Source: Mobula hypostoma
Lineage: Eukaryota
DNA length: 64,000 nt
NCBI RefSeq assembly: GCF_963921235.1
Contig: NC_086110.1
Span: forward strand, 12,958,001-13,022,000
Direction: 5' to 3'
Both the position numbers and the translations under genes were made by a program. Under the pieces are notes generated by a model. The model did not search any database, was not told where the DNA came from, and worked only from the letters and a program-made list of their open reading frames with translations. Below are positions 41,960 through 51,600 of this stretch, piece after piece (the stretch's first letter is position 1; each line of letters starts with the position of its first letter).

Positions 41960-42466
41960 TTTGTTCTTCAGTTTGTGCTACCGTAGTGCAGTTCGTAGCA
42001 AAACTGCACTAACAGCGACTCATTTGCTTGCATCTTCGGAAACTGCTCTATTTCCATCCTAAGTATCTCTTTTTCCCCTTTTCAGAGTTCTTTTGAAGAC
42101 CCTGACTTGGAGTTACACGGGGACTTCGATTCTTTGCGGAAATGGGACCCACTCTCTGGGCCTCACGACCTGTCACTTTTAGATATGGCAGAGACGCGGT
42201 ACAGGATTTTCGTGGCTCTTGGGACGAGCTAACTGGAGGCTAATGTCGCCGCCTGATGTTTCGTGGGAGTTCACGAAATATCGAAAGCAGCAAGCTGGCT
42301 GTTGGCTATATACCCAGAGACCTAAATTCTTTGGGCACAGTAATCTGAAAAAGCGAGGCAACAGACTTTTAACACCATGAATCAGTGAGTGGTTTTGTTA
42401 TGTCTCCCCTCTCGCTGTGAAACGTGGACATCACTTTTTCCCTTATTAGCGAGAGAGAGAGAGAGA

Positions 42467-42502
<36 letters not shown>

Positions 42503-42795: not shown

Positions 42796-45557
42796 AAAAT
42801 ATTGAAATAAAGTGAAGGTTGAGATACACTTGAAAAGTTACAGCTCTTTAATTAAGTGGAAAGAATTTACTTCAAAATTTGAATTAATTGCCGTTTTGAG
42901 GTCATCATTATGAGATTATTTACAGTGTCATGAAAAAGTTCGGGCACCCCAGTCAAAATTTCTGGTTAAGTGAGTCGAAGATGAGCTGATCTCCAAAAGT
43001 CATAAAGTTAAAGATAAATCATTCTTTTCAACATTTTGAGCAATATTAATGTATTATTTCTGTTTGGTACAATTTCAGATTCAAAAAAAAGGGAAAGGAG
43101 CACCAGGCAAATGTTTGGGAACCCCAAAAGAATTGAGCTGTCAGATAACTTTTACGAAGGTCTCTGACCTTAATTAGCTTGTTAGGGCTATGGGTAGTTC
43201 ACAGTCATCGTTAGGGAAGGCCAGCTGATGCAAATTTCAAAGGTTTATAAATACCCTGACTCCTGAAACCTTGTCCCAACAATCAGCAGGCATGGGATCC
43301 TCTAAGCAGCTGCCCAGCAGTCTGAAAGTTAAAACAAACATGTTCACAAAGCAGGAGAAGGCTATAAGAAGATAGTAAAGCGTTCTCAGGTAGCCGTTTC
43401 ATCAGTTCGTAATGTAATTAAGAAATGGCAGTTAACAGGAACGGTGGAGGTCAAGTTAAGGGCTGGAAGACCAAGAAAACTTTCCGAGAGAACTGCTCGT
43501 CGGATTGCTAGAAAGGCAAATCAAAACCCCCGTTTGACTGCAAAAAGACCTTCAGGAAAATTTAGCAGACTCTGGAGCGGTGGTGCACTGTTCTACTGTG
43601 CAGCGACACCTGCACAAATATGACCTTCATGGAAGAGTCATTGGAAGAAAACCTTTCTTGCGTCCTCACAACAAAATTCAACGTCATAAATTTGCAAAGG
43701 AACATCTAAACAAGTCTGATGCATTTTGGATACAAGGCCTGTGGACTATTGAATTTGGAATAGAACTTTTTGGCCGCAATGAGCAAAGGTATGTTTCGAG
43801 AAAAAAAGTGTGCAGAATTTTATGAAAAGAACACCTCTCCGACTGTTAAGCACGGGGGTGGATCGATCATGCTTAGGGCTTGCGTCGTAGCCAGTGGCAC
43901 GGGGAACATTTCACTGGTAGAGGGAAGAAAGAATTCAATATATTACCAGCAAATCCTGGAAGTGAACATCACACCATTTGTAAAAAAAATCTGAAGATGA
44001 CATGCCAGTGAGGGTAGGAATAGGATGCTCTGGAGGATGAACACGTGGCTGAGGAACTGGTGTAGGGAGCAGGGTTTCAGATTTCAGGATAATTGGGACC
44101 CCTTCTGGGGCAGATGGGACTTTTACAAGAGAGATGGGTTACACTTGAACTACAGGGGGACCAATATCCTTTCAGGGAGGTTTGTTAATGCTATTGGGGA
44201 GGCTTTAAACTAGATTTTCAAGGGGATGGGAACCAGAGTGCCAGAGCTGACAGTGTGGCTGGGGTGAAAATTAATGATGTTAAAAAGTTCAAGCAAATCC
44301 GCTAATAGAAAGGTAGTGAGTGGTGGTAAAAATCTTCTGAGGTGCATATATATCAATGCTAGGAGTATTGCGGGGAAGGCGGATGAGTTGAGGGCGTGGA
44401 TTGACACGTGGAATTATGACGTTATAGCAATTAGTGAAACTTGGCTACAGGAAGGGCAGGACTGGCAGCTTAATATTCCAGGGTTCTGATGTTTCAGATT
44501 TGATCGAGGCAGAGGAATGAAAGGTGGGGCAGTAGCATTGCTTGTTAGTGAAAATATTACAGCAGTGTTCAGGCAGGACAGATTAGAGGGCTTGTCTACT
44601 GAGTGGAGATGAGAAACAGGAAAGGTTAGTGGGATTGTATTACAGACCACCCAATAGTCAACGAGAATTGGAAGAGCAAATCTGCAAAGAGATAGCAGGC
44701 AACTGCTGGAAACATAAAGTTGTGGTCGTAGGGGATTTTAATTTTCCATATATTGATTGGAACTCCCATACTGTTAGCGGTCTAGATGGTTTAGAGTTTG
44801 TAAAATGTGTTCAGGAAAGTTTTCTAAATCAATATATAGAGGGACTAACTACAGGGGATGCAATTTTGGATCTCCTGTTAGGAAACGAGTTAGGACAATT
44901 GACTGAAGTCTGTGCAGGGGAGCACTTTGTTTCCAGTGATCATAACACCATTAGTTTCAGCTTGATCATGGACAAGGATAGATCTGGTCCGAGGGTTGAG
45001 GTTCTTAACTGGAAAAAGGCCAAATATGAAGAAACGAGAAAGGATCTAAAAAGCGTGGACTGGGACAGGTTGTTCTCTGGCAAGGATGAGATCGGTAGGT
45101 GGGAAGCCTTCAAAGGAGAAATTTTGAGAGTGCAGAATTTGTATGTTCCTGTCAGGATTAAAGGCAAAGTAAATAGGAATAAGGAATCTTGAATCTCAAG
45201 GGATATTGCAACTCTGATAAAGAAGAAGAGGGAGTTGTATAACATGTATAGGAAGCAGGGAGTAAGTAAGGTGCTTGAGGAGTATAAGAAGTGCAAGAAA
45301 ATACTAAAGAAATAAATCAGGAGGCCTGAAAAAAGACATGAGGTTGACCTGGCAGTCAAAGTGAAGGATAATCCAAAGAACTTTTACAGGTATATTAAGA
45401 GAAAAAGGATTGTAAGGGATAAAATTGGTACTCTTGAAGATCAGAGTGGTCGGCTATGTGCGGAACCAAAGGAAATGGAGGAGATCTTAAATAGTTTTTT
45501 TGCGTCTATATTTACTAAGGAAACTGGCATGAAGTCTATGGAATTAAGAGAAACAAG

Positions 45558-48500
45558 CGGGGGCTACTGAGGTGACTTTAAACTAGAATGGTTGGGGGGT
45601 GGGAATCAAATTAAAGCGGCTAGGTGTGAGGAGGTTAGTTCACAACAGAGGGATGGGAACCAGTGCAGAGAGGCAGAGGGGTGTAAAGTGAGCGTAGAAG
45701 CAAAAAGTACAAAGGGGAAAAGTAAAAGTGGCAGGCCGACAAATCCAGGGCAAGCATTAAAAAGGGCTAAGAGAGTTGTAAAAGAGCGCCTGAAGGCTTT
45801 ATGTGTCAATGCAAGGAGCATTCGTAATATGGTGGATGAATTGAAAGTGCAGATTGTTATTAATGATTATGATATAGTTGGGATCACAGAGACATGGCTC
45901 CAGGGTGACCAGGGATGGGAGCTCAACGTTCAGGGATATTCAATATTCAGGAGGGATAGACACGAAGGAAGGGGAGGTGGGGTGGCGTTGCTGGTTAAAA
46001 AAGAGATTAACGCAATAGAAAGGAAGGACATAAGCCGGGAAGATGTGGAATCGATATGGGTAGAGCTGCGTAACACTAAGGGGCAGAAGACGCTGGTGGG
46101 AGTTGTGTACAGGCCACCTAACAGTAGTAGTGAGGTCGGAGATGGTATTAAACAGGAAATTAGAAATGTGTGCAATAAAGGAACAGCAGTTATAATGGGT
46201 GACTTCAATCTACATGTAGACTGGGTGAACCAAATTGGTAAAGGTGCTGAGGAAGAGGATTTCTTGGAATGTATGCGGGATGGTTTTTTGAACCAACATG
46301 TCGAGGAGCCGACTAGAGAGCAGGCTATTCTGGACTGGGTTTTGAGCAATGAGGAAGGGTTAATTAGCGATCTTGTCGTGAGAGGCCCCTTGGGTAAGAG
46401 TGACCATAATATGGTGGAATTCTTCATTAACATGGAGAGTGACGTAGTTAATTCAGAAACAAAGGTTCTGAACTTAAAGAGGGGTAACTTTGAAGGTATG
46501 AGACATGAATTAGCTAAGATAGACTGGCAAATGACACTTCAAGGATTGACGGTTGATATGCAATGGCAGGCATTTAAAGGTTGCATGGATGAACTACAAC
46601 AATTGTTCATCCCAGTTTGGCAAAAGAATAAATCAAGGAAGGTAGTGCACCCGTGGCTGACAAGAGAAATTAGGGATAGTATCAATTCCAAAGAAGTAGC
46701 ATACAAATTAGCCAGAGAAAGTGGCTCACCTGAGGACTGGGAGAAATTCAGAGTTCAGCAGAGGAGGACAAAGGGCTTAATTAGGAAGGGGGAAAAAGAT
46801 TATGAGAGAAAACTGGCAGAGAACATAAAAACGGACTGTAAAAGCTTTTATAGATATGTAAAAAGGAAAAGACTGATAAAGACAAATGTAGGTCCCCTGC
46901 AAACAGAAACAGGTGAATTGATTATGGGGAGCAAGGACATGGCAGACCAATTGAATAATTACTTTGGTTCTGTCTTCACTAAGGAGGACATAAATAATCT
47001 TCCAGAAATAGTAACGGACAGAGGGTCCAGTGAGATGGAGGAACTGAGCGAAATACATGTTAGTAGGGAAGTGGTGTTAGGTAAATTGAAGGGATTGAAG
47101 GCAGATAAATCCCCAGGGCCAGATGGTCTGCATCCCAGAGTGCTTAAGGAAGTGGCCCAAGAAATAGTGGATGCATTAGTAATAATTTTTCAAAACTCGT
47201 TAGATTCTGGACTAGTTCCTGAGGATTGGAGGGTGGCTAATGTAACCCCACTTTTTAAAAAAGGAGGGAGAGAGAAACCGGGGAATTATAGGCCGGTTAG
47301 CCTAACGTCGGTGGTGGGGAAACTGCTGGAGTCAGTTATCAAGGATGTGATAACAGCACATTTGGAAAGCGGTGAAATGATCGGACAAAGTCAGCATGGA
47401 TTTGTGAAAGGAAAATCATGTCTGACGAATCTCATAGAATTTTTTGAGGATGTAACTAGTAGAGTGGATAGGGGAGAACCAGTGGATGTGGTATATTTGG
47501 ATTTTCAAAAGGCTTTTGACAAGGTCCCACATAGGAGATTAGTGTGCAAACTTAAAGCACACGGTATTGGGGGTAAGGTATTGGTGTGGGTGGAGAATTG
47601 GTTAGCAGACAGGAAGCAAAGAGTGGGAATAAACGGGACCTTTTCAGAATGGCAGGCGGTGACTAGTGGGGTACCACAAGGCTCAGTGCTGGGACCCCAG
47701 TTGTTTACAATATATATTAATGAGTTGGATGAGGGAATTAAATGCAGCATCTCCAAGTTTGCGGATGACACAAAGCTGGGTGGCAGTGTTAGCAGTGAGG
47801 AGGATGCTAAGAGGATGCAGGGTGACTTGGATAGGTTGGCTGAGTGGGCAAACTCATGGCAGATGCAATTTAATGTGGATAAATGTGAAGTTATCCACTT
47901 TGGTGGCAAAAATAGGAAAACAGATTATTATCTGAATGGTGGCCGATTAGGAAAAGGGAAGGTGCAACGAGACCTGGGTGTCATTATACACCAGTCATTG
48001 AAAGTGGGCATGCAGGTACAGCAGGCGGTGAAAAAGGCGAACGGTATGCTGGCATTTATAGCGAGAGTATTCGAGTACAGGAGCAGGGAGGTACTACTGC
48101 AGTTGTACAAGGCCTTGGTGAGACCACACCTGGAGTATTGTGTGCAGTTTTGGTTCCCTAATCTGAGGAAAGACATCTTTGCTATAGAGGGAGTACAAAG
48201 AAGGTTCACCAGATTGATTCCTGGGATGGCAGGTCTTTCATATGAAGAAAGACTGGATGAACTGGGCTTGTACTCGTTGGAATTTAGAAGATTGAGGGGG
48301 GATCTGATTGAAACGTATAAGATCCTAAAGGGATTGGACAGGCTAGATGCGGGAAGATTGTTCCCGATGTTGGGGAGGTCTAGAACGAGGGGTCACAGTT
48401 TGAGGATAGAGGGGAAGCCTTTTAGGACCGAGGTTAGGAAAAACTTCTTCACACAGAGAGTGGTGAATGTGTGGAATTCTCTGCCACAGCAAACTATTGA

Positions 48501-48688
48501 GGCCAGTTCATTAGCTATGTTTAAAAGGAAGTTAGATATGGCCCTTGTGGCTACAGGGGTCAGGGGGTATGGAGGGAAGGCTGGGTTCTGAGTTGGATGA
48601 TCAGCCATGATCATAATAAATGGCGGTGCAGGCTCGAAGGGCCGAATGGCCTACTCCTGCACCTATTTTCTATGTTTCTATGTTTCTA
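45558..48688 (+). mobile_element. CR1 LINE family B inserted in family A; retains ORF1 tail and complete ORF2
   Basis: Junctions ...GAAACAAG| and |(AAG)TAGTGAG reconstitute the host CR1; (TTCTATGT)n tail. Confidence 0.97.
45592..48591 (+). CDS. CR1 ORF2: APE endonuclease + reverse transcriptase, uninterrupted 999 codons
   Basis: NARS, GITETW, YRPP, GDFN, LDWV, SDHN; YRPVSLTS, QHGF, LDFQKAFDKV, GVPQGSVLGP, KFADD; C-terminal FFTQRVVNVWNSLP. The listed start codon is TTG, not ATG. Confidence 0.97.
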   Translation: MGGGNQIKAARCEEVSSQQRDGNQCREAEGCKVSVEAKSTKGKSKSGRPTNPGQALKRAKRVVKERLKALCVNARSIRNMVDELKVQIVINDYDIVGITETWLQGDQGWELNVQGYSIFRRDRHEGRGGGVALLVKKEINAIERKDISREDVESIWVELRNTKGQKTLVGVVYRPPNSSSEVGDGIKQEIRNVCNKGTAVIMGDFNLHVDWVNQIGKGAEEEDFLECMRDGFLNQHVEEPTREQAILDWVLSNEEGLISDLVVRGPLGKSDHNMVEFFINMESDVVNSETKVLNLKRGNFEGMRHELAKIDWQMTLQGLTVDMQWQAFKGCMDELQQLFIPVWQKNKSRKVVHPWLTREIRDSINSKEVAYKLARESGSPEDWEKFRVQQRRTKGLIRKGEKDYERKLAENIKTDCKSFYRYVKRKRLIKTNVGPLQTETGELIMGSKDMADQLNNYFGSVFTKEDINNLPEIVTDRGSSEMEELSEIHVSREVVLGKLKGLKADKSPGPDGLHPRVLKEVAQEIVDALVIIFQNSLDSGLVPEDWRVANVTPLFKKGGREKPGNYRPVSLTSVVGKLLESVIKDVITAHLESGEMIGQSQHGFVKGKSCLTNLIEFFEDVTSRVDRGEPVDVVYLDFQKAFDKVPHRRLVCKLKAHGIGGKVLVWVENWLADRKQRVGINGTFSEWQAVTSGVPQGSVLGPQLFTIYINELDEGIKCSISKFADDTKLGGSVSSEEDAKRMQGDLDRLAEWANSWQMQFNVDKCEVIHFGGKNRKTDYYLNGGRLGKGKVQRDLGVIIHQSLKVGMQVQQAVKKANGMLAFIARVFEYRSREVLLQLYKALVRPHLEYCVQFWFPNLRKDIFAIEGVQRRFTRLIPGMAGLSYEERLDELGLYSLEFRRLRGDLIETYKILKGLDRLDAGRLFPMLGRSRTRGHSLRIEGKPFRTEVRKNFFTQRVVNVWNSLPQQTIEASSLAMFKRKLDMALVATGVRGYGGKAGF

Positions 48689-51600
48689 AGTAGTGAGATC
48701 ATGGAAACTGTGCAGATCGAAAAGGAGGAGGTCCTTGCTGTGTTGAGGAAAATTAAAGTGCATAAATCCCCAAGACCTGACAGGGTGTTCCCTCGGACCT
48801 TGAAGGAGACTAGTGTTGAAATTGCAGGGGCCCTGGCAGAAATATTTAAAATGTCGCTGTCAACAGGTGAGGTGCCGGAGGATTGGAGAGTGGCTCATGT
48901 TGTTCCGTTGTTTAAAAAAGGATCGAAAAGTAATCCGGGAAATTGTAGGCCAGTAAGTTTAACTTCGGTAGTAGGTAAGTTATTGGAGGGAGTACTAAGA
49001 GACAGAATCTAAAAGCATTTGTATAGACAGGGACTTATTAGGGAGAGTCAACATGGTTTTATGCGTGGTAGTTCGTGTTTGACCAATCTATTGGAGTTTT
49101 TCGAGGAGGTTACCAGGAAAGTGGATGAAGGGAAGGCAGTGGATATTGTCTACATGGACTTCAGTAAGGCCTTTGACAAGGTCCCGCATGGGAGGTTAGT
49201 TAGGAAAATTCAGTCGCTAGGTATACATGGAGAGGTGGTAAATTGGATTAGACATTGGCTCAATGGAAGGAGCCGAAGAGTGGTAGTAGAGAATTGCTTC
49301 TCCGAGTGGAGGCCTGTGACTAGTGGTATGCCACAGGCATCAGTGCTGGGTCCATTGTTATTTGTCATCTATATCAATGATCTGGATGATAATGTGGTAA
49401 ATTGGATCAGCAAATTTGCTGATGATACAAAGATTGGAGGTGCAGTAGACAGTGAGGAAAGTTTTCAGAGCCTGCAGAGGGACTTGGACCAGCTGGAAAA
49501 ATGGGCTGAAAAATGGCAGATGGAGTTTAATACAGACAAGTGTGAGGTATTGCACGTTGGAAAGACAAACCAAGGTAGAACATATAGGGTTAATGTTAAG
49601 GTACTGAGGAGTGCAGTGGAACAGAGGGATCTGGGAATACAGATACAAAATTCCTCACAAGTGGCGTCACAGGTAGATAGGGTCGTAAAGAGAGCTTTTG
49701 GTACATTGGCCTTTATTAACCAGAGTATTGAGTATAAGTGCTGGAATGTAATGATGAGGTTGTATAAGGCATTGGTGAGGCCGAATCTGGAGTATTGTGT
49801 TCAGGTTTGGTCCCCAAATTACAGGAAGGATATAAATAAGGTTGAAAGAGTGCAGCGAAGGTTTACAAGGATGTTGGCGGGACTTGAGAAACTCAGTTAC
49901 AGAGAAAGGTTGAATAGGTTCGGACTTCATTCCCTGCAGCATAGAAGAATGAGGGGACATTTGATAGAGGTATATAAAATTATGATGGGTATAGATAGAG
50001 TGAATGCAAGCAGGCTTTTTCCACTGAGGCAAGGGGAGAAAAAAAGCAGAGGACATGGGTTAAGTGTGAGGGAGGAATAGTTTAAGGGGAAAGTTGGGGG
50101 GGGGGGCTTCTTCACATAGAGAGTGGTGGGAGTATGGAATGAGCTGCCAGGCGACGTGGTAAATGCGGGTTCTTTTTTTAACATTTAAGAATAAATTGGA
50201 CAGATACATGGATGGGAGGTATATGGAGGGATATGGTCCGTGTGCAGGTCAGTGGGACTAGGCAGAAAATGGTTCGGCACAGCTAAGAAGGGGCAAAAGG
50301 CCTGTTTCTGTGCTGTAGTTTCTATGGTTTCTATGAAAAGAGGATGGTCTCTATAACAGGACCTTGATCCTAAACGCACCTGAAAATCCACAATGAACTA
50401 CCTTAAGAGGCGCAAGCTGAAGGTTTTGCCATGGCCCTCACAGTCCCCCGACCTAAACATCACGGAAAATCTGTGGATAGACTTCAACAGAGCAGTGCAT
50501 GCAAGACGGCTCAAGCATCTCACAGAACTGGAAGTCTTTTGCAAGCAAAATGGGCGAAAATCCCCCAAACTAGAATTGAAAGATGCTTCGCTGGCTATAG
50601 GAAGCGTTTACAAGCTGTGCTACTTGCCAAAGAAGGTGTTACTAAGTACTGACCATGCAGGGTGCCCAAACGTTTGCTCCGGGCCCTTTTCCCTTTTTGT
50701 TATTTTGAAACTGTAAAAGATGGAAATAAAAAGTAATCTTGCTTAGCATATTAAAGAAATGTGTCAACTTTAACTTTATGCCTTTTGGAAATCAGGTCCT
50801 CTCTTACTCGCTTAGCTATTCACAGCAGCACAAATTTTGACCATTGGTGGCCAGAATTTTGCATGCCACTGTAAGTGAAGAGAATGTGGCGATATTTAGA
50901 CAACACTACAGCAGCGATAACGTTCACATTTGAAACAATGCAAATGGAATAAATAGAGTTTTGCTTTTCACCATGAGTAAGCTAGCATTTTTGTTCGCAC
51001 TTTTAACACTAAAAGCAGTCGATTACTTGTGTTTACGATTATTCGTTGGCGGAGGCATTTCCGACTAACGGTCGGATGAAAGAAGGTGTAAAGGACACTT
51101 CAAAATTCAGCATCGTCTGTCCTAAATCCAACTACGTTTAAATCGAACGAACAGAATATTGGACCTATATTTAGTCATAGCTCTCGTTGTGGAAGTTTGC
51201 TTCAATTGACAGCTTCTCATCTTCTTCAAAACATGTACACCTGCGTACGTTGCAAGTTCCTGTTTCTGACTAAATGCAGATGCAATTTTAATACCGAGAA
51301 GGTGCGGAGCGGCCGAGACCAACTTGTTATTCTCGTAACTTGTGATCTGTGAAAGTAAATCATATTGACCATTAGTTCATCATCCTGCGGCTGCAGAGGC
51401 TCTCGAGTCTGAAGCAGAGTGGTCACGTGTATCTGCATCTCATTGATTATCAGCGGTAGGCTGTAACCGTAATGTTTGTCTTTTAAAATAAACTTTCTTT
51501 TTCTGATTTTCCATTCGGACTGAAATCTCGTGCTACGGCCCATCTCTCGCGCACAGAGCAATGTTTGTGCTCAGTTTGACATCCAATCTTTCATCTGAAT

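What the first reader, a model, noticed from the sequence alone, without database searches (positions are those of the whole stretch)
44200..45605. Candidate programmed -1 ribosomal frameshift (U_UUA_AAC) linking ORF1 and ORF2 in two CR1 families
Seen: family B ORF1 ends acT TTA AAC TAG (heptamer 45577-45583). The -1 frame (TTT AAA CTA GAA TGG TTG...) is exactly the 999-codon ORF2 frame. Its first AUG (45829) falls after the endonuclease NARS motif, so AUG initiation would truncate the enzyme. A G-rich tract GGTTGGGGGGTGGG starts 6 nt after the heptamer. The divergent family A has the same gcT TTA AAC TAG (44204-44213), and the -1 peptides align (FKLDFQGDGNQ vs FKLEWLGGGNQ). Established: U_UUA_AAC is the coronavirus-type slippery site, stimulators sit about 5-9 nt downstream, and LINE ORF2 is usually thought to be made by reinitiation. 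Inference: these CR1s make an ORF1-ORF2 fusion by -1 frameshifting, possibly stimulated by a G-quadruplex or stem. Caveat: the decayed family A copy needs one A removed at 44282-44286 to join its EN frame and has an alternative ATG at 44274. I do not know of an experimental demonstration, but could not check the literature.
Basis: partly seen in the sequence, partly recalled or inferred. Interest (0 to 1): 0.85.

Follow-up and report, generated by a model that had tools for sequence, protein, structure and literature searches.

The report
CR1 LINE ORF1-ORF2 frameshift site
Two nested copies of a CR1 jumping gene in this devil-ray window carry a classic ribosome "slip" signal where gene 1 ends and gene 2 begins; the same signal sits unchanged in CR1 elements of sharks, a bony fish, a turtle, a bird and probably a frog, so the copying enzyme is most likely made as a fusion with the first protein, as in retroviruses, though nobody has tested this at the bench.

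Summary
Both junctions read NNT-TTA-AAC-TAG, with ORF2 in the -1 frame and a G-run 10-11 nt downstream.

- **Conservation.** In 11 independently sampled CR1 families the heptamer and the stop are invariant, while the flanks are about 41% identical. Chance, given each family's own codon usage, is about 1e-14.
- **No AUG needed.** The -1 frame stays open from the heptamer to the first AUG or to the endonuclease in 8 of 8 families (about 1e-9). Family B has no ORF2-frame AUG before codon 206; the window's ATG at 45829 is a private Lys-to-Met change.
- **Best reading.** Programmed -1 frameshifting makes an ORF1p-ORF2p fusion (about 0.72).

- The window's family B copy is 5'-truncated and keeps only 19 nt of ORF1.
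- In family A the -1 frame closes after 33 codons, and an ATGATG lies in the endonuclease frame. Most genomic copies share that state.
- No conserved stem exists downstream; a G-quadruplex is only conjecture.

Related insect-type LINEs instead show an in-frame UGA-CUA arrangement that looks like readthrough.

The searchable literature has no prior report. The scan has flagged this site many times elsewhere in this genome.

The parts
44003..45557 (+). Family A CR1 copy, 5' part. It is 5'-truncated inside ORF1 and decayed, and is interrupted by the family B insertion.
   Evidence: tblastn of B's ORF2 against the window. Loose ends at 44003 and 45557 show where other copies run on (table 7).
44003..44213 (+). 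Family A ORF1 tail (esterase-type C-terminus ...RDGLHLNYRGTNILSGRFVNAIGEALN), with stop TAG at 44211-13.
   Evidence: Translation. It matches the ORF1 consensus ...DGLHLNxxGTxxL...LN.
44204..44210 (+). Family A heptamer T_TTA_AAC, in X_XXY_YYZ phase with ORF1.
44222..44230 (+). Family A G-tract GGGGATGGG, 11 nt after the heptamer.
44274..44308 (+). Family A frame problem: ATG ATG (44274-79) lies in the endonuclease frame, which is ORF1's 0 frame. It is followed by the A5 run 44282-86 and by TAA TAG 44303-08, which closes the -1 frame.
   Evidence: A 1-nt deletion at 44282/3 accounts for about 1% of DNA contig depth but about 40% in two runs guessed to be RNA (table 4).
45558..48687 (+). Family B CR1 copy, 5'-truncated, about 3.13 kb, nested in family A, with AAG microhomology/duplication at both ends.
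   Evidence: 98.9% identity to Mobula hypostoma L007:4908-8034.
45558..45586 (+). All that remains of family B ORF1: 19 nt before the heptamer, encoding ...GATEVTLN, then TAG at 45584-86.
   Evidence: Identical to the end of the 311-aa ORF1 in L007.
45577..45583 (+). Family B heptamer T_TTA_AAC.
45590..45603 (+). Family B G-tract GGTTGGGGGGTGGG. The G6 run starts 10 nt after the heptamer.
45571..48591 (+). Family B ORF2 frame (-1 relative to ORF1): 1006 open codons plus the stop, encoding an APE endonuclease and a reverse transcriptase.
   Evidence: Pfam PF03372, PF14529 and PF00078.
45829..45831 (+). First ATG in B's ORF2 frame. It is private to this copy; the family has AAG (Lys).
   Evidence: table 3 (45830 T>A in essentially all other contigs); L007.
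48663..48688 (+). Family B 3' end: (CTATGTTT) x 3.4 tandem octamer, a CR1 hallmark.
48689..50176 (+). Family A copy, 3' part (reverse transcriptase region), resuming after the B insertion.
   Evidence: aligns to B's ORF2 residues 486-981; loose end at 45557.

Best explanation
The junction is a programmed -1 ribosomal frameshift site of CR1-type LINEs.

Proposed mechanism:
- Ribosomes translating ORF1 (an esterase-type ORF1p) reach NNU_UUA_AAC, which sits directly before the ORF1 stop.
- A minority of them slip back one base. The Leu and Asn tRNAs re-pair on UUU and AAA.
- Those ribosomes continue in the ORF2 frame and make an ORF1p-linker-endonuclease-RT fusion. The rest terminate at UAG and make ORF1p alone. 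This would give a Gag to Gag-Pol type ratio.
- A conserved G-run 8-11 nt downstream probably assists, by a mechanism not yet known.

Shown: the sequence anatomy, the phase, the deep conservation, the silent-site constraint, and an ORF2 frame that is open without any AUG.

Inferred: that slippage happens, how efficient it is, that a fusion protein exists, and any role of the G-run.

The two copies in this window are themselves dead. B lacks ORF1, and A is decayed with its -1 frame closed.
For: 1. Eleven junctions from divergent CR1 families all read NNT-TTA-AAC plus a stop (TAG in 10, TAA in 1), with ORF2 in the -1 frame. They come from ray families A and B, Hypanus, Scyliorhinus, the wood stork Mycteria, the turtle Gopherus, the mormyrid Paramormyrops, three Logan contigs and one metagenome contig. 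In the 10 aligned the flanks are only 41-43% identical.
2. The codon before the heptamer encodes A, T, G, S, Y, F, C or H but always ends in T. TTA is only about 10% of Leu codons and AAC about 46% of Asn codons in these ORF1s. The joint chance for 7 intact families is about 10^-14.5.
3. Of 112 ORF1 homologues, 46 end exactly in x-L-N, and 45 of those 46 x residues can be encoded by an NNT codon (P = 5e-4).
4. The -1 frame opens only 1-24 codons before the heptamer, and 1-6 codons in most families. The frame change can therefore only occur at the heptamer.
5. The -1 frame has no stop from the heptamer to the first in-frame AUG, or to the endonuclease, in 8 of 8 families (joint about 10^-8.8). 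The other two frames carry stops. AUG positions are not conserved, and family B has none before codon 206.
6. A distant relative (L006) has a different canonical heptamer, T_TTT_TTA, in the correct phase.
7. The G-run is present in 11 of 11 junctions at 8-11 nt, and 24 of 29 Gly codons there are GGG against a 43% background (P about 1e-5).
8. Esterase-type LINEs fetched without reference to the junction show the alternative fusion-by-recoding layout: ORF1-TGA-CTA with ORF2 in frame and open in 11 loci from at least 6 sequence clusters.
9. U_UUA_AAC is among the most slip-prone heptamers for vertebrate ribosomes (Atkins et al. 2016, PMC5009743).
Against: - There is no experiment, ribosome profiling or junction peptide.
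- No conserved downstream stem or pseudoknot was found: RNAalifold gave 0 pairs and Rfam gave no match. A G-quadruplex enters the predicted minimum-energy fold in only 4 of 11 junctions.
- In family A the -1 frame closes after 33 codons and an ATGATG sits in the endonuclease frame. About 99% of DNA contig depth in two ray species shares this state. At least one very successful lineage may therefore make ORF2 another way.
- Some families have an AUG next to the site: L009 one codon before the heptamer, L006 overlapping it, and Hypanus P0233 starting MGGGG.
- One ORF1 (P0143) has Glu before L-N, which cannot give the first U.
- Human L1 shows that a LINE ORF2 can be translated without an AUG after ORF1 termination (reviewed in PMC2881922).
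Confidence: 0.72

Rival explanations
1. Termination-dependent reinitiation. Ribosomes finish ORF1 at UAG and a fraction restart immediately downstream in the ORF2 frame, at a non-AUG codon or at a nearby AUG where one exists. This is the mechanism proposed for human L1 and for SART1. On this view the conserved UUUAAAC-UAG plus G-run is a restart or tethering signal, not a slip site.
For: - This is the prevailing view for bicistronic LINEs (PMC3708506; PMC2881922).
- ORF2 opens right at the stop.
- Some families have an AUG within a few nt of the stop (L006, L009, P0233).
- Family A's common state has an in-frame ATGATG 61 nt after the stop.
- The G-run contains UGGGA-like motifs.
Against: - It does not explain why the three bases upstream of the stop codon's preceding codon must form X_XXY_YYZ. 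It does not explain the obligatory T in a silent third position, or TTA and AAC rather than synonymous codons.
- It does not explain why L006 substitutes another canonical slippery heptamer.
- No restart codon is conserved.
- The in-frame UGA-CUA layout in relatives points to fusion by recoding, not restart.
Confidence: 0.16
2. In family A specifically, and perhaps in other lineages, ORF2 is made from its own AUG (44274). The heptamer is then an inherited relic that yields only a 33-residue extension of ORF1p when ribosomes slip.
For: - The frame structure of the window copy.
- The 5-A state accounts for about 99% of DNA contig depth in two species (table 4).
Against: - Contigs with one A fewer, which join the -1 frame to the endonuclease, make up about 40% of depth in two runs guessed to be RNA.
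- The closest intact relatives keep the -1 frame open from the G-run to the endonuclease (P0233).
- Logan contig depth is a crude measure, and the list of variants was truncated.
Confidence: 0.08
3. The motif is conserved for a reason unrelated to ORF2 translation, or by descent alone. Examples would be a required ORF1p C-terminus (L-N) together with an RNA packaging or ORF1p-binding site.
For: - The L-N C-terminus is invariant at the protein level.
- The G-run could be a protein-binding site.
Against: - Silent positions are fixed while the surrounding sequence is near random identity.
- The phase, the -1 ORF2 and the minimal overlap all coincide.
- The -1 frame being open without an AUG still needs a translation route.
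Confidence: 0.04

Closest known systems
Retroviral and LTR-retrotransposon gag-pol -1 frameshift sites; the coronavirus ORF1a/1b site (U_UUA_AAC, as in IBV)
   Same: A canonical X_XXY_YYZ heptamer (the same letters as in IBV), a downstream enzyme ORF in the -1 frame, and the expected outcome of a structural-protein to structural-enzyme fusion ratio.
   Different: The host is a non-LTR LINE. No conserved stem-loop or pseudoknot was found, only a G-run 8-11 nt downstream. The 0-frame stop directly abuts the heptamer.
Luteovirus and dianthovirus frameshift sites (for example BYDV GGGUUUU-UAG); comparison from my own knowledge, not checked here
   Same: The slippery heptamer is immediately followed by the 0-frame stop codon.
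   Different: Those sites use a nearby bulged stem-loop plus long-range pairing. Nothing comparable was detected here.
Human L1 and Bombyx SART1 ORF2 translation (unconventional termination-reinitiation; the UAAUG stop-start)
   Same: A bicistronic LINE RNA in which ORF2 translation depends on ORF1 translation and can be AUG-independent.
   Different: In L1 and SART1, ORF2p is made as a separate protein and no slippery heptamer is involved. Here the anatomy predicts a fusion protein.
MLV-type gag-pol stop-codon readthrough and the UGA-CUA(G) leaky context
   Same: The insect-type esterase LINEs seen in passing have ORF1-UGA-CUA with ORF2 in frame.
   Different: That layout is not present in the window. 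It is supporting context only and is untested.

Membership tests
CR1-group LINE (non-LTR retrotransposon) | ORF2 with an N-terminal APE-type endonuclease and a reverse transcriptase | tested here: met
   Pfam PF03372, PF14529 and PF00078 on window:45577-48588.
CR1-group LINE (non-LTR retrotransposon) | Esterase (SGNH/GDSL)-type ORF1 | tested here: met
   PF13472 on the full-length family B ORF1 of L007. Family A's tail matches the ORF1 consensus. PMC13343379 states that esterase ORF1 is the type found in CR1 and L2.
CR1-group LINE (non-LTR retrotransposon) | 3' end of short tandem (about 8-nt) repeats instead of a poly(A) tail | tested here: met
   (CTATGTTT) x 3.4 at 48663-48688.
CR1-group LINE (non-LTR retrotransposon) | Reverse transcriptase phylogeny places it in the CR1 clade rather than L2 or Rex1 | not tested
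   No tree was built. The nearest named relatives are bird, turtle and frog CR1-like ORF2s.
Programmed -1 ribosomal frameshift site | X_XXY_YYZ heptamer in the 0-frame phase of the upstream ORF | tested here: met
   T_TTA_AAC at 44204 and 45577, and in the nine further junctions from other loci, 11 in all. T_TTT_TTA in L006.
Programmed -1 ribosomal frameshift site | Downstream ORF in the -1 frame, overlapping only around the heptamer | tested here: met
   The -1 frame opens 1-24 codons upstream. Exception: the window's family A copy closes after 33 codons.
Programmed -1 ribosomal frameshift site | Conservation beyond what the encoded proteins require (silent sites) | tested here: met
   Joint codon-usage probability about 10^-14.5. 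Flanks are 41% identical.
Programmed -1 ribosomal frameshift site | Stimulatory RNA structure 5-9 nt downstream | tested here: inconclusive
   No consensus pairs and no Rfam match. A conserved G-run lies at 8-11 nt. A G-quadruplex is predicted in 4 of 11 junctions.
Programmed -1 ribosomal frameshift site | A trans-frame protein product demonstrated | not testable with these tools
   This needs a reporter assay, mass spectrometry or ribosome profiling.
Termination-reinitiation (SART1 UAAUG or calicivirus TURBS type) | Restart AUG overlapping the stop or within a few nt of it | tested here: not met
   Family B has no ORF2-frame AUG before codon 206. AUG positions are not conserved across families. 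An AUG is present only in L006, L009 and P0233.
Termination-reinitiation (SART1 UAAUG or calicivirus TURBS type) | Upstream motif complementary to 18S rRNA | not tested
   No rRNA complementarity analysis was done.

The most novel reading that the evidence does not exclude
Making ORF2p as an ORF1p-ORF2p fusion by translational recoding is the general, ancient strategy of esterase-type (CR1-group) LINEs. Vertebrates would use -1 frameshifting at UUUAAAC-UAG, helped by a structure-poor G-tract (possibly an RNA G-quadruplex or a direct interaction with the ribosome). Insect relatives would use UGA-CUA readthrough. That would make these LINEs the non-LTR counterpart of retroviral Gag/Gag-Pol, and mechanistically unlike L1.
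Probability: 0.5. Interest if true: 0.85.

Novelty: new member of a known kind. Interest (0 to 1): 0.74.

Why it matters
How LINEs translate ORF2 from a bicistronic RNA is a long-standing open question, studied mainly in human L1 and silkworm SART1. CR1 is the dominant retrotransposon of birds, reptiles and cartilaginous fishes.

If CR1 ORF2p is made as a frameshift fusion, several things follow:
- The ratio of ORF1p to ORF2p, RNP assembly and cis-preference would work more as in retroviruses than as in L1.
- "Intact CR1" censuses that demand an ORF2 start codon would be mis-calibrated.
- Gene predictors would keep mis-annotating these elements.
- Vertebrate genomes would hold thousands of copies of a natural -1 frameshift signal with an unusual G-tract in place of a pseudoknot.

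The claim can be tested directly with a short reporter cassette.

Tried and rejected
- **AUG start at 45829.** Rejected. It is a private Lys-to-Met change.
- **ENA contig L002, where ORF2 seemed in frame with the TAG.** Explained by one extra G in an 8-G run on a 2x-coverage contig. Its close relative in Scyliorhinus (L010) has 7 G's and the -1 layout.
- **Hypanus protein P0002 ('hydroxyacid oxidase 2 isoform X1').** It is a CR1 copy with one extra G upstream of the heptamer, which fuses the ORFs. It is not evidence of a natural in-frame fusion.
- **Conserved stem or pseudoknot.** RNAalifold on 11 junctions gave 0 pairs. Single-sequence folds share no hairpin. Rfam gave no match.
- **2A-like separation.** Family B's linker has TNPGQ (45739-45753), but this is not NPGP and it is absent from the other families' linker peptides, so it was dropped.
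- **Transcriptional slippage.** The heptamer has no long homopolymer, so this was rejected by reasoning.
- **Other collections.** The scan of bacterial and archaeal genomes returned only bacterial SGNH hydrolases. Two viral-contig scans found nothing.
- **Look-ups that failed.** The coelacanth ORF1 P0146 is not on record. Kojima et al. 2005 (PMC1190309) is not held.
- **Literature.** Ten full-text searches and eight papers read found no statement that CR1 uses frameshifting. Subscription-only papers, such as Haas 1997 and Kajikawa 1997, could not be checked.
- **Consensus sequences.** I built no family consensus. Only natural copies were compared.


Full report
**1. What is in the window**

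The stretch 44003-50176 holds two nested CR1-type LINE copies on the + strand.

Family A:
- It is 5'-truncated inside ORF1 at about 44003 and carries many stops.
- It runs to 45557 and resumes at about 48689 (tblastn; loose ends).
- It sits inside a Tc1-like transposase remnant.

Family B:
- It occupies about 45558-48687.
- It is a young insertion, 98.9% identical over 3131 nt to a copy in Mobula hypostoma (L007).
- Its ORF2 frame is intact: 1006 open codons, with Pfam endonuclease and RT domains.
- Its 3' end is a CTATGTTT octamer repeat.
- It keeps only the last 19 nt of ORF1.
- The statement 'family B ORF1 ends ...ACT TTA AAC TAG' therefore rests, within the window, on seven codons. It is nevertheless correct, because L007 carries a complete 311-aa esterase-type ORF1 ending in the identical sequence.

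**2. The observation**

Two refinements apply:
- ATG 45829 is private to this copy. Position 45830 is A in essentially all other contigs of two ray species (table 3) and in L007. The family therefore has Lys there and no ORF2-frame AUG before codon 206, deep inside the endonuclease.
- In family A the -1 frame closes at TAA TAG 44303-08. The endonuclease lies in ORF1's own frame behind a second stop (TGA 44265-67) and an ATG ATG at 44274-79.

**3. Is it more than chance?**

The 10-mer alone is not unusual in 64 kb. I therefore fetched junctions from elsewhere:
- Protein searches with ORF2 and with a full ORF1 were followed by look-ups of the encoding contigs.
- An unbiased fetch of esterase-ORF1 loci from metagenome contigs used a search pattern in the esterase core, not at the junction.

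Eleven junctions from divergent families all read NNT-TTA-AAC followed directly by a stop (TAG in 10, TAA in 1), with ORF2 in the -1 frame. The sources are ray A, ray B, Hypanus, Scyliorhinus, the wood stork Mycteria, the turtle Gopherus, the mormyrid Paramormyrops, three Logan contigs and the metagenome contig L012. In the ten aligned, the heptamer and the first two stop letters are invariant, while the 29 nt before and the 30 nt after are 41% and 43% identical pairwise.

**4. Tests that separate nucleotide-level from protein-level constraint**

- *Silent sites.* The codon before TTA encodes A, T, G, S, Y, F, C or H, yet always ends in T. TTA is about 10% of Leu codons and AAC about 46% of Asn codons in these ORF1s. 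The joint probability for seven intact families from their own codon usage is about 10^-14.5, assuming independence.
- *ORF1 C-termini.* Among 112 ORF1 homologues, 46 end exactly in x-L-N. They come from sharks, rays, sawfish, coelacanth, Xenopus, turtles and a mormyrid. In 45 of the 46, x can be encoded by an NNT codon, against 80% expected (P = 5e-4).
- *Overlap.* The -1 frame opens only 1-24 codons upstream of the heptamer, and one codon upstream in Scyliorhinus. The heptamer is therefore the only place where the frame can change.
- *Open frame without an AUG.* In 8 of 8 families the -1 frame has no stop between the heptamer and the first in-frame AUG, or the endonuclease where no AUG exists. 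The joint probability is about 10^-8.8. The other two frames carry 0-8 stops over the same span. AUG positions are not conserved.
- *A different heptamer.* A distant relative (L006) lacks TTTAAAC but has T_TTT_TTA, another canonical slippery heptamer, in the correct phase one codon before its stop.

**5. The downstream element**

- A run of 4-7 G starts 8-11 nt after the heptamer in 11 of 11 junctions, usually followed by 1-2 nt and then GGG.
- In the -1 frame it encodes Gly, and 24 of 29 Gly codons there are GGG against 43% in the ORF1 bodies (P about 1e-5).
- RNAalifold finds no conserved pair in the 90 nt downstream, and Rfam has no match.
- With G-quadruplex energies switched on, ViennaRNA places a quadruplex at the G-run in 4 of 11 sequences, including family B.
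- The G-tract is therefore real and is constrained at the RNA level. A G-quadruplex is only a conjecture, and a stem is not supported.
- Because ORF2p is needed in tiny amounts, even weakly stimulated slippage might suffice. This last point is inference.

**6. Context that strengthens the fusion reading**

Of 27 metagenome loci with an esterase ORF1 followed by an endonuclease, one (L012) is the vertebrate type. About 20 show a different layout. These come mostly from termite-gut samples and are presumably insect host DNA.

In that layout ORF1 ends in TGA and ORF2 is in the same frame:
- ORF2 is open from the codon after the TGA in 11 loci, belonging to at least 6 sequence clusters.
- The stop is usually followed by CTA, the classic leaky context.
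- In the two largest clusters (12 of the 20 loci, plus L014) a GGGG tract lies about 6-11 nt downstream.
- Three of the loci have no AUG before the endonuclease.

Frameshifting and readthrough are the two routes retroviruses use to make Gag-Pol. Finding both layouts in one LINE group argues for fusion by recoding rather than restart.

**7. What argues against**

- There is no experimental evidence of any kind.
- Family A is a real problem for 'two families'. The 1-nt deletion that would join its -1 frame to the endonuclease accounts for about 1% of DNA contig depth in two species (450 of 44,655 and 206 of 25,130). It accounts for about 40% in two small runs that are only guessed to be RNA (table 4).
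  - Either a very prolific lineage makes ORF2 from ATG 44274, or the bulk of the copies descend from a disabled master.
  - I could not decide between these. Contig depth is crude, and the variant list was truncated.
- Some families have an AUG beside the site (L009, L006, Hypanus P0233).
- One ORF1 (P0143) has Glu before L-N.
- L1 shows that AUG-independent ORF2 translation after termination is possible.

**8. Mechanism and odds**

- Programmed -1 frameshifting at U_UUA_AAC, giving an ORF1p-ORF2p fusion: 0.72.
- Termination-reinitiation: 0.16.
- AUG-initiated ORF2 in family A, with a relic heptamer: 0.08.
- Unrelated conservation: 0.04.

After a tandem slip the junction peptide reads ...T-L-N-L-E-W-L-G-G-G..., not F-K-L. 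This matters for mass-spectrometry searches.

**9. Comparison and novelty**

The site has the letters of the IBV-type heptamer, which is listed among the most slip-prone for vertebrate ribosomes (PMC5009743). It has the heptamer-then-stop layout that I recall from luteoviruses; that comparison is from my own knowledge and was not checked.

I found no statement that CR1 uses frameshifting in any of these:
- the large recoding review;
- a 2026 survey of vertebrate CR1-group elements (PMC13343379);
- the ORF1 survey of the Jockey superfamily;
- a non-LTR review;
- a chicken CR1 study;
- the 2A-in-LINE papers.

The field's stated view is that the ORF2 mechanism is unclear or is reinitiation-like. 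Older subscription papers could not be read.

I file it as a new member of a known kind, a -1 frameshift site. The scan has flagged the same site on many other pieces of this genome, and two follow-ups reached the same reading. The tests reported here are my own.

Only natural copies were compared.

Noticed in passing
L014, L016, L027, L036, L044, L059, L061, L065, L066, L068, L078 (metagenome contigs, mostly termite gut): Esterase-type LINEs in which ORF1 ends in TGA, usually TGA-CTA, and the endonuclease/RT ORF follows in the same frame with no further stop. In most of the TGA-CTA loci a GGGG tract lies about 6-11 nt downstream. This looks like programmed UGA readthrough making an ORF1-ORF2 fusion.
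   Followed up: partly
L006:1854-1866 (JGI metagenome 3300010046): A distant CR1-like element has T_TTT_TTA (the HIV-type slippery heptamer) in phase, then TGT TAG, a G-run, and an ATG in the -1 frame overlapping the site.
   Followed up: partly
window 44282-44286: The A5 run of family A. Contigs with one A fewer (which joins the -1 frame to the endonuclease) are about 1% of depth in DNA runs but about 40% in two small runs guessed to be RNA. Either the expressed copies differ from the bulk, or this is a sampling artefact.
   Followed up: partly
L001:3001-4785 (Hypanus sabinus); P0132 (Pristis pectinata): Annotation artefacts. The NCBI model 'hydroxyacid oxidase 2 isoform X1' is a CR1 ORF1 fused to the endonuclease by one extra G in a G-run. 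'40S ribosomal protein S24 isoform X2' is a CR1 ORF1.
   Followed up: partly
P0008, P0145, P0105, P0113: CR1-like ORF2 and ORF1 proteins filed under bacteria (Carnobacterium maltaromaticum, Pseudomonas aeruginosa, Candidatus Thiodiazotropha MAGs). These are most likely vertebrate or invertebrate host contamination of those assemblies.
   Followed up: no
window 43280-43990: A decayed Tc1/mariner-like transposase ORF into which the family A CR1 copy is inserted.
   Followed up: no
window 45739-45753: Family B's ORF2 linker encodes T-N-P-G-Q. This resembles the 2A core but does not meet it (NPG-P), and it is absent from the other families' linker peptides.
   Followed up: partly
window 42447-42502: A (GA)n microsatellite of about 55 nt upstream of the transposon cluster.
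   Followed up: no
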